From positions 513,399,974 through 513,463,973 of the forward strand of contig NC_058133.1 of the NCBI RefSeq assembly GCF_016433145.1: DNA of 64,000 nucleotides, in the 5' to 3' direction. The stretch comes from Gracilinanus agilis (taxonomy: Eukaryota). Of the stretch, positions 39,001 to 48,000 are shown piece by piece (the first letter of the stretch is position 1; every line of letters starts with the position of its first letter). Under the pieces are notes generated by a model. The model made no database searches, had not been told where the DNA came from, and saw only the letters and a program-made list of their open reading frames with translations. The translations under genes and the position numbers were made by a program.

Positions 39001-42000
39001 ATTGACCATATCAATAACAAAACCAACACAAATCATAAAATTGTCTCAATAGATGCAGAAAAATCTTTGGACAAAATAAAACAACCTATTCCTACCCAAA
39101 ACACTAGAAAACAGACCTTTCCTTCAAATGATAAGGAATATTTATCTAAAACCATGGTAGCTAAAGCAGTAAGAGAAGAAAAAAAATGGAAAGAACAGGC
39201 AACAAAGAAACCAAATTATTGCTCTTTGCAAACCATAAGATATTATACTTAGAGAATCCTAGGAAATCACCAGAAAACTAGTGGAAATAATTAACAATAA
39301 ACCCATACAAATCATTGGCTTTTCTGTATATTGCCAACAAAATCCAGCAAGAAGAGATAGAAATTCCACTTAAAATAACTGCAGACAATATAAAATACTT
39401 AGGGGGTCTACCTGCCCCTATGGAATTATATAAAATATATGAACACAATTACAAAACATGATTTACATAAATAAAGTCAGATCTAAACAACTGGAGAAAC
39501 ATTAATTGCTCATGGGTAGGTCAAGCCAATATGATAAAAATGGCAATTCAACCTAACTTCATTTGCTTAGACAGGGCCATACAAATCAAAGGAGCAAAAA
39601 AGCATTTTATAGACCTAGAAAAAAATAGCAAAATTCATCTAGAAGAACAAAAAGTCAAGAATATCGAGAGAATCAATAATGTTTTTCAGATCTACTTATC
39701 CAGCCTCATCTTGTCTATTGACTATCTTACGGCTCTAACTGCTTATTAAATAATCAGCTTGTATTGGATGTCCCAAAGGCATCTTCCATGCACTGTGTCC
39801 AAAATCTAAGTCATCACTTCTTCCCCAAACCCTCCAAATGCCTCCATCCTCCTGACAGGCCCCTCAACTCCCACCCCAGCTGTCATCCTGACCTCATTAG
39901 CTTTCATCTCCCATCAGCCAACCTTGCTGAGTCTTACTGATTTTACCTTCATGTCATTTCCAGTGGGGCAATGAGGTGGCGCAGTGGTTAGAACCTGGGC
40001 CTGAGGATAGGAAGACTCATCTCCCTGAGTTCAAATCTGGCCTTAGACACTTAGTATGTGACCCTGGGCAAATCACTTTACCCCATTTGCCTCAGTTTCC
40101 TCATCTGTAAAATGAGCTGGAGAAGGAAATGGCAAACTATCTGCTTGACTTTGAACAAGTCACTTCATTCTGTCTCATTTTCCTCCTCTGTAAAATGAGA
40201 AGGAAATGGTAAACCACTCTAGCATCTGCCAAGAAAACTCGAAATGGGGTTCGAGAGGGTCAGGCACTGAAAAGACCAAATAAAATATCTAGTATCTCCC
40301 CCCAACCCCCATCCTGCTTCTGTCTTGGTGCAGGCCCTTGACACCTTGTTCCTGGACTGTTTGCAGTAGGCTTCTAGTTGGTTTGCCCACCACAGGTCTC
40401 TTCTAGTTTACCCTCCATTGAGATGTCAAAGGGATCTTCCTGAAATACTTGTGATCCAAAGCCTTCATAACCAGCCACCTCCCCCTCCCACATGCATATT
40501 CACACACAAGATCAGAGGGGAAGCAGGGAGGCCCATTATTGCCACTATTGTTCAAGATTGTACCGGAATTGCTAGCTTTAGGACAAAAAGAAAGAAATAG
40601 AGGGAATTAGCATAGGCTATAAAGAAATGAAACTATCTGAAGATGACAGGATGGTATACTTAGAGAATCCGCTAAAAATAGCTGAAATTATTAACAACTT
40701 TAGCCAAATTGCAGAATATAAAATAAGCCCATACAAATTGTCAGTGTTTCTATAGATTACTTACAAAATCCAGCATGAAGGAATAGAAAAAGAAATTATA
40801 TTTAACTATAAATAATATAAAATACCTGGAACACTTTTCACACAGATAAAATCAGATCTTGAAACAATTGGAAAAATATTAATACTTATGAGTAAGTAGA
40901 GCCGATAAAATAATATAATAAAATGACAATTTGACCTAAATTAATCTCCTTATTCAGTACCATGCCAATCCAATTGCCCCAAATTATTTCCTAGATTTGG
41001 AAAAATAATCAAATTCATCTGGAAGAGCAAAAGGCTAAGAATGTCAAGAGAATCTGGAAAAAAAAAAAGATGAAATAACTGACCTAATAATATGGGATCT
41101 AAACTATTGCAGAACAGTAATCATCTAAACAGTCTGTTACTGGCCAAAAAGCAGAGTAGTGGATCAGTGGAATACATTAGGTACACAATTCTATAGTGTT
41201 TGATAAACCCAATGAGCCAAGCTTTGGGGGTGAGAATTCACGCTCTGACAAAAACTGTTGGGAAAACTGGAAAACAGTATGGTAGAGCTAGCTGGGGCGA
41301 GATCCACTTCTCACCCCAGTACCAAAATAAGATCAACTGGAGAATATAATTTAGACATAAAGGGTGATACCGTAAGGAAAGGGGGAACAGGAAATAGTTA
41401 CCTGTCAGATCAGATAAAGGAAGAATTTATGGCCAAACAAGAGCTAGAGAACATTATGAAATGTTAAAGGGGATCCTTTCAATTCTATTAAGTTTAAAAG
41501 GTTTTGTACCAACAAAATCAATGCAGCCAAGATAAGCAGGAAAGCGGAAAGCTAGGGCAAGTTTTTTACCCAGTTATCTCTCTTGAAGACCAGATGAATG
41601 GAGAACTGAGTCAAACATAAAAATAGAAGTCGTTCTCTAGTGGATAAATGGTCAAAGGATGAAACAAAAGCTATCTGTAGTCATAAATAAATCCTTCCCT
41701 TCTCTCTTTGTGACAATTCTAATTAGGGAGAGTGGCAAGGGCTAGGCGATCTGGGCTAAGGCCTTTCCCCGGGTCACAGCGCTAGGAAGGCTCTGAGTAC
41801 GGCCACATTCGAACTCAGGGCCTGCCTCCTGGCTCATCTAGCTGCCCCCAAGTCACTTGTAATTAGAAAAATGCAAATGAAAGCAGCTTGGAGGCTGCAC
41901 CTGCCCCTGTAGGAAAAGGGAAGCCCTGGGAAAATTGGGAAGTCATTGGAGACTAATGCTGGGCCCGAGGTGCCCTGCAGGGCCAGGTCTGGGGTGTCCC

Positions 42001-45000: not shown

Positions 45001-48000
45001 GTGCCAGCAGGTCATGGAAGCTCTTGGGGGGATGACAGACGGAGGGCCCCCCTCCCCCACGGGGGAGGCAGGAAGAGCTCCCATTGGAGTGGGGGGCTGG
45101 GAAGTGAGGCGTCATCAGCCTGTGTAGAGAGGGGGAGGGGAGTGCCCCCCCCAACCTCTCTACCACCTGGGAGCCCCCAGCCCCCTCCTGTGTCCTGCCA
45201 TTGGCTGCTGGGCAGAGGTGGTGGAGAGGGGGAGGGGAGCGGCTCTGGGGGGGTCCCTCTGCCTTTCTAGTAGTGAACTGGGGGAGGAGGGTGGCTGCCC
45301 ACAGAGCGCCCCCCAGTGTCATCTTTGGCACCCGTGCTGTAGGGTCGCCATCACTGATCTGGGGGGAGTTCAGCATAGGAAGGGGGAGCTCCTCAGGAAG
45401 CAGAAAGGAATTCCTTCGGTCCCTTTTGACCTTTTGACCCAGAACACTGGGGTTTGGGGTGGACACCAGGCCAGCAGGAGGTCTTCAGTTCCAGTGTGGC
45501 CTCAGACATTTCCCAGCCTAGTGTCTCTGGGCCAGTCACTTCACCCCCTTTTACCCAGTCCTCGTCCTTCTGCTTCAAGTAATTCTAGGACAGAAGTTGA
45601 GGCTAAAGGCAGTGACTTAATTGGGGGTGCAAATGGGGTGGAATAAAGATGTGAGAAGCTCGAAGAGAATAGTTCTGGTTCTGATTCTGGCTAAGTCAGT
45701 CCATACAATTTTCTCTGTTTTCCCTTTGATCGTGTCTGACGTGTGCAGTAATACTCTGCGCTGTTTGTGGGGAATCCTTTGTTCCTCCCTTCTGTAGGGG
45801 GAAGGAGCCACCTCCAAGTGTCTTTGCACCCCTCCAGGCCCTCTGGGTCCAACTGGCCTTTGGACTAGTGGGACCATTTCACAGGCCCACAACAGCGCCT
45901 TTATGGGCCAGTTTTCTAGTGGTCAAATTTCAATTGTTATTTTCCTTTTTGGGCATCTTTGCCAGTCTGATAAGTGGAACCGCAGAATCATATGTGTTTT
46001 TAATGTACAAAATTGGACAGCTTGTATCATGGATAAATATTCTCATATTGTTTTATTCTTATTTAAAATTCTTTTTGCCAGAATTACATTTAATTTAGTT
46101 CATACAATTTTATTTAGCCATTTTCTAATTGTTAGGCACATGGTTTATTTCCTATTTTAAATAGTATTTATATGACCAATTTCATAGAGAAAAATCTTTT
46201 CTCCATCATTCTTAGGGAATATTCTTTTTTTATTTAAAAAAAATTTACACGTAATAACAAATTTCCACATAAGTTTTCCAAAGTCATATGATCCAAATTG
46301 TCTCCTCTTCTTCCCTCCCCTCATGGAGCTGGCAAGCAATTCAGTCTGGTTAGCCATGTATTATCACACAAAACCTATTTCCATATTATTCATTTTTGTA
46401 AGTGAATAATCTAATAGAGCCTGAATTATATATATATATATATATATATGTATAAACATGTAACAAATCATATGGTTTCATCTGCATTCCTCCTCCAACA
46501 GATCTTTCTCTAGATGTGGAGAGTGTTCTTTCTCTTAAGTCCTCAGAATTGTCCTGGGTCATTGCTTTGCTGCTAGTAGCAAAAGCTATTACATATGATT
46601 GTCCCAGTGTTTCAGTCTCTGTGCACAATGTTCTCCTGGTTCTGCTCCTTTCACTCTGCATTAGTTCCTGGAGGTTGTTCCAGTTCACATGGAATTCCTC
46701 CAGTTCGTTATTCCTTTGAGCACAATAGTATCCCATCACCAACAGATACCACAATTTGTTCAGCCATTCCCCAGTTGATGGACATCCCTTTAATTTCCAA
46801 TTTTTGCCACCACAGAAAGAGCAGGGTACAAACCCAGTAGTAGTATGGCTGGATCAAAGGGCAGGCATTCTTTTAAAGCCCTTTAGGTATAATTCCAAAT
46901 TACCTTCCAGAATAGTTGGATCAATTCACAACTCCACCAGCAGTGCATTAATGTTCCAATTTTGCCACATCCCCTCCAACATTTATTATTTTCCTTTATT
47001 GTCATATTGGCCAATTGCTAGAGGTGAGGTGGTACCTCAGTGTTGCTTTACTTTGCATTTCTCTAATTAGGAGTGATTTAGAACATTTTTTAGTTGATTA
47101 TTGATAGCTTTGATTTCTTCATCTGAAAACTGTCTATTCACATCCTTTGACCATTTGTCAATTGGGGAATGACTTGGATTCTTATAAATTTAATTTAATT
47201 CTTTATATATTTGAGAAATGAGACCTTTATCAGAGAAATTTGTTATAAAAATTTTCCCTCAATTGTTTCCTTTCCTAATCTTGGTGCATTGGTTTTGTTT
47301 GTACAAAACCTTTTTAATTTAATATAATCAAAATTATTTATTTTACATTTCATAATGTTCTCTGTCTCTTGTTTGGTCATACATTCTTCCCTTATTCATA
47401 GGTCTGGCAGGTAGACTATTTTATGTTACTCTAATTTGCTTATAATACCACCCTTTATGTCTAAATCATATTCCCATTTTGAACTTATCTTGGTATAGAT
47501 TGTAAGATATTGATCTAAACTTAATTTTTACCATCCTGTTTTCTAATTTTCCCAGCAATTTTTGTCAAATTTTGTTCTTATCATTTGTCGGTTTTGTTCT
47601 TATCCTAAAAGCTGGGATCTTTGGTTTTATCAAACACTAGATGGCTGAGGTCATTTACCCCTAGTTTGTTCCATTGATCCACCCTTCTATTTCTTAGCCA
47701 GTACTAGATTGTTTTGAGGATCACTGCTTTATAGTACAGTTTACTATAGTACACTGCTTTATAGTATAGTTTAAGATCCAGTACTGCTAGGCCACTCTCC
47801 ACATTTTTTTTCCTTTAATTCTCTTGATAATCTTGATCTTTTGTTCTTCCAGATGAATTTTGTTATTATTTTTTCTAGTTCTATGAAATAATTTTTGGTA
47901 GTTTGATTGGTATGGCACCAAATAAATAAATTATTTTAGGTAGAATTGTCTTTTTTATTATATTAGCTCAGCCTATCCATACCATAAGCAATTAATGTTC

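What the first reader, a model, noticed from the sequence alone, without database searches (positions are those of the whole stretch)
41700..45900. Intragenic GC peak built from formerly AT-rich transposons: candidate GC-biased gene conversion hotspot
Seen: inside gene 2, around the KRAB-B exon, a ~4-kb CpG-rich block is made of recognisable repeats rewritten toward G/C. Positions 41870-42310 are collinear with the L1 ORF2 C-terminus. Bases 42061-42120 are 41/60 GC (68%), against 20/60 (33%) for the roughly homologous L1 stretch at 37681-37740. SINE copies at ~41720-41850, ~42920-43030, ~43590-43690 and ~44290-44400 show similar A/T-to-G/C changes. Known: protection from methyl-CpG decay can keep CpGs but cannot create GC in an AT-rich L1. 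Clustered weak-to-strong substitutions are the signature of gBGC, as in the GC peaks of PRDM9-less canids. Inference: a long-lived recombination hotspot inside a KRAB-ZNF gene made a CpG island de novo out of transposon DNA.
Basis: partly seen in the sequence, partly recalled or inferred. Interest (0 to 1): 0.8.

Follow-up and report, generated by a model that had tools for sequence, protein, structure and literature searches.

The report
GC-biased overprint on old transposons
A 4-kb GC-rich patch inside a marsupial-type KRAB zinc-finger gene has rewritten the ends of two old L1 elements from A/T towards G/C, most likely through GC-biased gene conversion at a persistent recombination hotspot, a process already known from dogs, birds and other mammals.

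Summary
The observation largely holds. Positions ~41850-45900 are 62% GC with CpG o/e 0.46; the flanks are 27-38% GC with o/e ~0.1. One 5'-truncated L1 (40609-42406, +) enters the block from the left. Its first part is 35% GC and its last 490 bp are 59% GC. Against four other L1 copies in the window, the securely aligned tail shows 27 weak-to-strong versus 6 strong-to-weak changes (controls 36:34). Transitions and transversions are both raised. 14 of its 23 CpGs are demonstrably new and none is inherited. The block is therefore an overprint, not an insertion.

Corrections:
- Only ~36-44% of the block is recognisably transposon-derived.
- The five SINE fragments belong to a natively GC-rich family and barely changed in net GC.
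- The core carries promoter-like motifs and the KRAB-B exon, and may be an older CpG island that spread outward.
- Published work I read lists no PRDM9 loss in marsupials, so the canid case is only an analogy.

GC-biased gene conversion is the best mechanism, but it is inferred; no recombination data were available. First-reader notes report similar patches elsewhere in this genome. This is a new member of a known kind.

The parts
40609..41687 (+). Old 5'-truncated L1 (copy Q), upstream part, still AT-rich (35% GC); internal control for the tail
   Evidence: Profile hit 41116-41693 E 1e-98; BLAST to other L1 copies; W>S:S>W 60:25 versus controls 132:126, partly due to transcription-strand asymmetry
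41719..41835 (-). Old SINE fragment inserted into L1 Q
   Evidence: nhmmer E 5e-14; L1 profile positions run on across it (648 then 644)
41850..42406 (+). Tail of L1 Q (ORF2 C-terminus, 3' UTR, terminus). 41850-42340 has been rewritten to 59% GC with 23 CpGs; the terminal 66 bp is still 26% GC
   Evidence: Collinear profile hits at 41850-41910 and 42037-42115; 3' end matches copy E; W>S 27/85 versus 36/321 per W site, p=1.5e-5; 14 new CpGs
42407..42922 (.). GC-rich core of unknown origin with promoter-like motifs: GC boxes at 42419 and 42520, E-box at 42487, YY1-like site at 42571
   Evidence: Motif scan; no relatives in the window; single-copy depth; no RNA contig coverage in three runs
42923..42998 (+). 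Old SINE fragment
   Evidence: nhmmer E 5.5e-13
43151..43246 (+). KRAB-B-like exon of gene 2 (AG acceptor, GTGAGT donor); 66% GC, 8 CpGs
   Evidence: Paralogous to the gene 1 exon at 10343-10438 (tblastn E 5e-5). 57/96 identical; gene 2 has G/C where gene 1 has A/T at 18 sites and the reverse at 8; CpG 8 versus 1. RNA contigs of runs X5 and X9 cover it
43604..43690 (+). Old SINE fragment
   Evidence: nhmmer E 1.4e-9
43790..44243 (-). Younger 5'-truncated L1 3' end inserted into the block (poly-T 43793-43813, target-site duplication GGATCTTCTT); 44.5% GC
   Evidence: BLAST to 25374-25806 and 46487-46673; very high read depth; W>S:S>W 18:9 versus 21:13 in relatives, not significant
44295..44388 (-). 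Old SINE fragment
   Evidence: nhmmer E 3.6e-13
44389..45457 (.). G-rich segment of unknown origin: 64% GC, G skew +0.20, CpG o/e 0.34, falling to 0.16 at 45001-45500
   Evidence: only low-complexity matches elsewhere
45458..45602 (+).
   Evidence: nhmmer E 7e-15
45837..45989 (-). Second old L1 fragment (copy F) crossing the right border of the block
   Evidence: Profile hit E 4e-13 at L1 profile positions 679-847; W>S:S>W 12:13 outside (45901-45989) and 13:4 inside (45837-45900); the difference is not significant on its own (p=0.11)

Best explanation
A long-acting, regionally confined, GC-favouring substitution process has overprinted about 4 kb of an intron of a KRAB zinc-finger gene.

Shown:
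- Both borders of the GC-rich block lie inside old L1 fragments, so the borders are not insertion junctions.
- Inside the block, ancestral A/T sites became G/C about three times as often as in other L1 copies. G/C-to-A/T changes occurred at the normal rate. CpGs were created where none existed.

Inferred:
- The process is GC-biased gene conversion at a recombination hotspot that stayed in place for a long time.
- The hotspot is most plausibly of the PRDM9-independent 'default' kind, centred on a hypomethylated, promoter-like CpG island (core about 42400-43800).
- Conversion tracts spread the bias a few hundred bp into the neighbouring L1s, the SINEs and the KRAB-B exon.
For: - One L1 changes from 35% to 59% GC along its length.
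- In the profile-supported anchors, W>S:S>W is 27:6 versus 36:34 in four control copies (p=0.0045).
- Per W site the rate is 0.318 versus 0.112 (p=1.5e-5). S>W per S site is unchanged.
- Implied equilibrium GC is 0.73 versus 0.40.
- All four W>S classes are raised: A>G 7, T>C 9, A>C 7, T>G 4. This fits a fixation bias better than a single mutational signature.
- 14 CpGs are new and none is inherited. The excess survives removal of CpG-type transitions.
- A second L1, in the opposite orientation, shows the same trend at the right border: 12:13 outside and 13:4 inside. Pooled with the first L1 the contrast is 40:10 versus 48:47, p=0.0006.
- Old SINE copies in the block show 50:47, against 12:34 for equally old copies outside (p=0.006).
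- 45001-45500 is 64% GC but CpG-poor, so the GC gain is separable from CpG protection.
- Published framework: W>S-driven acceleration and gain of CpG islands in dog (PMC4350167), and default hotspots with stronger gBGC at hypomethylated islands in PRDM9-bearing mammals (PMC11161765).
Against: - No recombination, DSB, methylation or allele-frequency data were available, so the link to recombination is inferred.
- C<->G transversions are also raised (7/50 versus 0/204). gBGC alone does not predict this; it points to added mutagenesis or multiple hits.
- The 66-bp L1 terminus at 42341-42406 stayed at 26% GC inside the block.
- SINE fragments at the edges of the other GC blocks in the window show no W>S excess (18:37). 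Being a CpG island is therefore not sufficient.
- Ancestral states come from only 3-4 diverged copies in the window, not from a curated consensus. Between the anchors the alignment is near random (identity 0.30-0.48).
- The effect at the second L1 is not significant on its own (p=0.11).
- Three RNA runs gave no sign of a transcription start in the promoter-like core.
Confidence: 0.58

Rival explanations
1. A non-recombinational bias at a hypomethylated, open-chromatin island. This could be a mutational bias (for example error-prone repair or R-loop-associated damage) or weak selection to maintain island or promoter function. It would raise G/C locally without any hotspot.
For: Promoter-like motifs in the core. 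Positive G skew of +0.16 to +0.27 on the sense strand, as at R-loop-forming islands. A raised C<->G transversion rate that suggests extra mutagenesis.
Against: The bias affects transitions and transversions alike, and L1s in both orientations. It extends into transposon DNA with no plausible function. GC is also high where CpG is depleted, at 45001-45500. SINEs at the edges of the other CpG-rich promoter blocks in the window lack the bias.
Confidence: 0.2
2. Most of the block is natively GC-rich unique DNA: an old promoter island plus naturally GC-rich SINEs. Transposons merely landed beside or inside it. The overprint is real but confined to a few hundred bp at the margins, so nothing was built from transposons.
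For: About 56-64% of the block has no recognisable transposon origin. The SINE family is natively 55-61% GC and shows no net gain. The L1 3' end abuts the GC-box cluster within ~15 bp. The younger L1 insert is still 44.5% GC.
Against: About 490 bp of L1 Q and at least 64 bp of L1 F are clearly converted. Composition is uniform across parts of different origin. No repeat library was available, so old converted repeats in the unassigned part would have gone unseen.
Confidence: 0.17
3. The block is an assembly artefact or a chimeric join.
For: None found.
Against: Contigs of run X1 at single-copy depth (~22x) match 41700-43784 and 44310-45282 with no differences, and 45255-46274 with one base difference and one gap. 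They bridge the left border. The L1 profile positions run collinearly across both borders.
Confidence: 0.02

Closest known systems
GC peaks and gBGC-gained CpG islands of canids (Axelsson 2012; Berglund 2015, PMC4350167)
   Same: Kilobase-scale GC- and CpG-rich patches with strongly raised W>S substitution, raised total substitution rate and raised equilibrium GC. CpG islands are gained through substitution rather than only preserved.
   Different: Canids lack PRDM9. The papers I read report no PRDM9 loss in marsupials. No recombination map was examined here. The case rests on one locus and on transposon copies as the neutral reference.
PRDM9-independent 'default' hotspots at hypomethylated CpG islands in PRDM9-bearing mammals (Joseph et al. 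2024, PMC11161765)
   Same: gBGC signatures concentrated at promoter-like, hypomethylated islands despite an intact PRDM9. That paper proposes this as the cause of the GC-richness of amniote CpG islands.
   Different: That study covers placental mammals; a text search found no mention of marsupials. Methylation and hotspot status of this locus are unknown.
Biased clustered substitutions and gBGC tracts in primates (Dreszer 2007; Capra 2013; Cohen, Kenigsberg and Tanay 2011; all recalled from memory, not read here)
   Same: Dense clusters of W>S changes over roughly 1 kb, and a class of CpG islands that gain CpGs through W>S substitution.
   Different: Primate tracts are usually attributed to short-lived PRDM9 hotspots and are much less saturated than the ~32-44% of A/T sites changed here.

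Membership tests
gBGC hotspot / GC peak | Excess of W>S over S>W substitutions relative to neutral controls of the same sequence family | tested here: met
   L1 anchors 27:6 versus 36:34 (p=0.0045). Per W site 0.318 versus 0.112 (p=1.5e-5). Pooled with L1 F, 40:10 versus 48:47 (p=0.0006).
gBGC hotspot / GC peak | The bias is independent of CpG hypermutability or hypomethylation | tested here: met
   Excluding TG/CA-to-CG type changes leaves 23:6 versus 34:34 (p=0.008). S>W per S site is unchanged. 14 CpGs are new and none is inherited.
gBGC hotspot / GC peak | All W>S classes and both strands are affected (fixation bias, not a single mutational signature) | tested here: met
   A>G 7, T>C 9, A>C 7, T>G 4 in the anchors. 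L1 F, on the opposite strand, shows the same trend. Caveat: C<->G changes are also raised, which gBGC does not predict.
gBGC hotspot / GC peak | Kilobase-scale confinement with decay at the edges | tested here: met
   Gradient within L1 Q. L1 F goes from 12:13 to 13:4 across position 45900. L1 copy B, 800 bp to the right, is unbiased.
gBGC hotspot / GC peak | Coincides with a measured recombination or DSB hotspot | not testable with these tools
   No crossover, LD, DMC1 or SPO11 data were accessible.
gBGC hotspot / GC peak | W>S alleles segregate at higher derived frequency than S>W alleles | not testable with these tools
   Only one read-laying run on assembled contigs was allowed. It showed two or three variants in the block.
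CpG island (Gardiner-Garden/Frommer-type criteria) | GC >50%, CpG o/e >0.6, length >200 bp | tested here: inconclusive
   Of the 500-bp bins, only 42001-42500 (0.58, 0.71) and 43501-44000 (0.54, 0.66) meet the criteria. The block overall is 61.7% GC with o/e 0.46, and 45001-45500 has o/e 0.16.
Promoter CpG island | A transcription start site within the island | tested here: inconclusive
   GC boxes, an E-box and YY1-like motifs lie at 42419-42571. There is no RNA contig coverage of 42100-42900 in three RNA runs of unknown tissue.
LINE-1 3' fragment (copies Q and F) | Collinear homology to the ORF2 C-terminus and the 3' end of other L1 copies | tested here: met
   Profile hits. Control copy B hits human ORF2p residues 1194-1241. 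Q's own translation is no longer recognisable. No target-site duplication was found for Q.

The most novel reading that the evidence does not exclude
This marsupial genome, although marsupials are reported to keep PRDM9, harbours evolutionarily stable kilobase-scale hotspots. These create or enlarge CpG islands out of old transposon DNA. In this gene they also drive GC- and CpG-laden amino-acid changes into the KRAB-B exon. First-reader notes report the same pattern at several other loci of this genome. It could therefore be a genome-wide feature, and a sequence-only way to map ancient hotspots in a species without fine-scale recombination maps.
Probability: 0.3. Interest if true: 0.6.

Novelty: new member of a known kind. 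Interest (0 to 1): 0.45.

Why it matters
The locus is a clean natural experiment. Single L1 elements straddle both borders of a GC peak, so the same element serves as case and control. The results show that GC and CpG were created rather than merely preserved. If recombination data confirm a hotspot, this would extend stable CpG-island-associated gBGC to marsupials, whose genome is otherwise AT-rich and (from memory, not checked here) low in recombination. Transposon overprints could then be used to map ancient hotspots genome-wide. The locus also illustrates how such a process can alter a coding exon (KRAB-B) of a fast-evolving zinc-finger gene. The underlying mechanism is already well described in other vertebrates.

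Tried and rejected
1. Orthologue retrieval. A protein search with the unique N-terminal part of the gene 2 zinc-finger exon returned only distant zinc-finger proteins at 25-44% identity, with no didelphid orthologue. No cross-species polarisation was possible.
2. Pfam scan of the L1-homologous translation and of seven GC-rich ORFs in the block: nothing reached a curated cut-off. The ORFs look like by-products of GC-richness.
3. Rfam scan of 40500-46500: no family.
4. Tandem or internal duplication as the source of the block: only trivial repeats.
5. Paralogy of the block with the other GC blocks (1500-3000, 5000-7000, 31000-35000): only SINE and low-complexity matches.
6. Sensitive search of the unassigned segments against the window: only the KRAB-B paralogue.
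7. The younger L1 insert as a time marker: W>S 18:9 versus 21:13 in relatives, not significant.
8. A W>S halo in the AT-rich upstream part of L1 Q (60:25 versus 132:126). It is partly explained by transcription-strand asymmetry: A>G is 30 against T>C 9 in the sense copy, and the ratio is reversed in two of the three antisense control copies. It is therefore not counted as firm evidence.
9. Retained ancestral CpGs as a confound: excluded.
10. Literature searches found no paper describing kilobase-scale GC peaks in opossum.
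Full report
**Setting.** The window holds two KRAB zinc-finger genes on the + strand.
- Gene 1: KRAB-A at 8732-8858, a KRAB-B-like exon at 10343-10438, and the zinc-finger exon at 19537-21819.
- Gene 2: KRAB-A at 34842-34968, a KRAB-B-like exon at 43151-43246, and a zinc-finger ORF at 48343-52908 whose splice acceptor I guessed near 48390 but did not check.
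- GC-rich blocks lie at 1500-3000, 5000-7000, 31000-35000 and 41800-45900 in an otherwise 27-45% GC sequence.
- I could not verify the species. The repeats and the best full-coverage protein hits look marsupial.

**The block.**
- From about 41850 to 45900, GC is 55-68%.
- With the younger L1 insert removed, 41850-45457 is 61.7% GC with CpG o/e 0.46. The flanks have o/e about 0.1.
- Only two 500-bp bins reach o/e above 0.6, and 45001-45500 is 64% GC with o/e 0.16. It is therefore a GC peak with intermediate CpG content, not a uniform classical island.
- Contigs of run X1 at single-copy depth match 41700-43784 and 44310-45282 with no differences, and 45255-46274 with one base difference and one gap. 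The block is not an assembly artefact, although X1 may be the assembly's own source.

**What the block is made of.**
- Five fragments of an old subfamily of a tRNA-related SINE.
- The last 557 bp of an old L1 (copy Q).
- A younger 5'-truncated L1 3' end at 43790-44243, with a poly-T and a 10-bp target-site duplication.
- Recognisable transposon DNA totals 36% of 41700-45900, or about 44% if F's unalignable tail is counted.
- The remainder has no relatives in the window apart from the KRAB-B paralogue and sits at single-copy depth.
- The segment 42407-42600 carries two GC boxes, an E-box and a YY1-like site. Three RNA runs gave no contigs there, while two of them cover the KRAB-B exon.

**L1 copy Q is the key evidence.**
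- A profile of four other L1 copies in the window (B, C, D, E) hits Q at 41116-41693 (E 1e-98), 41850-41910 (E 5e-6) and 42037-42115 (E 9e-10).
- Profile positions run on across the SINE inserted at 41688-41849, so this is one element.
- The L1 terminus at 42349-42406 matches copy E only weakly.
- The homologous piece of copy B matches human L1 ORF2p residues 1194-1241 (E 2e-6). Q's own translation no longer matches anything.
- The upstream 858 bp of Q is 35% GC and 41850-42340 is 59% GC. A natively GC-rich subfamily is therefore excluded.

**Substitution counts in Q.** I took as ancestral any state shared by at least two other copies.
- In the two profile-supported anchors, Q has 27 W>S and 6 S>W changes. 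The pooled controls have 36 and 34 (p=0.0045).
- Per ancestral A/T site the rate is 0.318 versus 0.112 (p=1.5e-5). Per G/C site the S>W rate is 0.12 versus 0.167, not significant.
- The implied equilibrium GC is 0.73 versus 0.40.
- Over the whole tail the counts are 106:26. Between the anchors, however, identity to the other copies falls to 0.30-0.48, so those columns are unreliable.
- Transitions and transversions are both raised.
- The tail has 23 CpGs. Fourteen sit where the ancestral dinucleotide was not CpG, none is inherited, and nine cannot be polarised. The control copies have 1-4 CpGs.
- One possible confound was that the controls lost ancestral CpGs which Q retained. Removing every TG/CA-to-CG type change leaves 23:6 versus 34:34 (p=0.008), so this confound is excluded.

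**L1 copy F is a partial replicate in the opposite orientation.**
- Outside the block (45901-45989) F shows 12 W>S and 13 S>W. Inside (45837-45900) it shows 13 and 4.
- This is not significant alone (p=0.11). Pooled with Q it gives 40:10 versus 48:47 (p=0.0006).
- Both borders of the GC peak therefore fall within pre-existing elements. The block is an overprint, not a piece of foreign GC-rich DNA.
- L1 copy B, 800 bp to the right, is unbiased.

**SINEs.**
- Over the columns covered by each copy, the majority-rule sequence of the window's SINE copies is 52-63% GC (55-61% for the five copies in the block), so these are not AT-rich elements.
- Copies in the block show W>S:S>W of 50:47 and essentially unchanged GC.
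- Equally old copies outside show 12:34 (p=0.006), and copies at the edges of the other GC blocks show 18:37 (p=0.03).
- They therefore carry a relative W>S excess, but they are weak evidence. Subfamily differences from the young majority are also counted as changes.

**KRAB-B exon.** Against its gene 1 paralogue the gene 2 exon is 57/96 identical. It has G/C where gene 1 has A/T at 18 sites and the reverse at 8, and it has 8 CpGs against 1. The comparison is unpolarised, but the direction agrees with the overprint reaching coding sequence.

**Mechanism.**
- The pattern is a tripled W>S rate across all classes, a normal S>W rate, de novo CpGs, kilobase confinement, independence from orientation, and GC gain even where CpG is depleted. 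This is what GC-biased gene conversion predicts, and it is not what protection from CpG decay predicts.
- Comparable W>S-driven acceleration and gain of CpG islands is documented in dogs (PMC4350167).
- gBGC at PRDM9-independent default hotspots on hypomethylated islands is reported for many PRDM9-bearing placentals (PMC11161765).
- Cavassim 2022 lists mammalian PRDM9 losses only in platypus and canids, and PMC10166821 states that marsupials have Prdm9. The canid case is therefore an analogy, and a default-hotspot reading fits better.
- I rate the overprint itself as well supported (about 0.85) and the gBGC-hotspot mechanism at about 0.58, because no recombination, methylation or polymorphism data could be examined.

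**Points that do not fit neatly.**
- C<->G transversions are raised in Q: 7/50 versus 0/204 (p=8e-6), six of them within one ungapped 50-bp stretch. gBGC does not favour these. Break-associated mutagenesis or multiple hits are possible.
- The 66-bp L1 terminus stays at 26% GC although it gained three CpGs.
- The W>S excess in Q's AT-rich upstream part is partly an orientation effect. A>G exceeds T>C in the sense copy, and the reverse holds in two of the three antisense control copies.

**Context from the scan.** First-reader notes, all unchecked, describe similar GC/CpG patches over old repeats elsewhere in this genome. If real, the phenomenon is genome-wide. I did not test them.

**Verdict.** This is a new example of a known process, and it is made unusually clean by two L1 elements that straddle the borders.

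Noticed in passing
window 42037-42115: C<->G transversions are strongly raised in the converted L1 tail: 7 of 50 ancestral G/C sites versus 0 of 204 in four control copies. Six lie in one ungapped 50-bp stretch. gBGC alone does not predict this.
   Followed up: partly
window 42341-42406: The 66-bp A/T-rich 3' terminus of L1 Q remains 26% GC between segments of 59% and 63% GC, yet it carries three apparently new CpGs (o/e 3.8).
   Followed up: no
window 41116-41687 and L1 copies at 46700-48042, 37560-38664, 36380-37554: Transcription-strand asymmetry. The L1 in sense orientation to gene 2 has A>G 30 against T>C 9. Antisense copies B and D show the reverse per site, and copy C only marginally.
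   Followed up: partly
window 1779-2370 and 5395-6005: Two GC-rich blocks upstream of gene 1 are diverged duplicates of each other (63% identity over ~600 bp). This looks like a duplicated promoter region.
   Followed up: no
window 43188: RNA contigs of runs X5 and X9 read T where the window has A, inside the KRAB-B exon. By my codon count this is TTA to TTT, Leu to Phe. It may be an allele or strain difference.
   Followed up: no
window 45375, 42385, 46034: Run X1 differs from the window at 45375 (A>G at full depth), has an extra G after 42385 in about half the depth, and lacks 1 bp at 46034.
   Followed up: no
window 41700-45900: Five of the 21 SINE fragments detected in the window lie in this 4.2-kb block, which is 6.6% of the sequence. 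All five are truncated and of the older sequence type (TGTG instead of TCCG/TCTG in the core).
   Followed up: partly
window 2501-3000 and 45001-45500: Segments with 63-64% GC but CpG o/e of only 0.12-0.16. They are GC-rich without CpG retention and sit next to CpG-rich parts.
   Followed up: no
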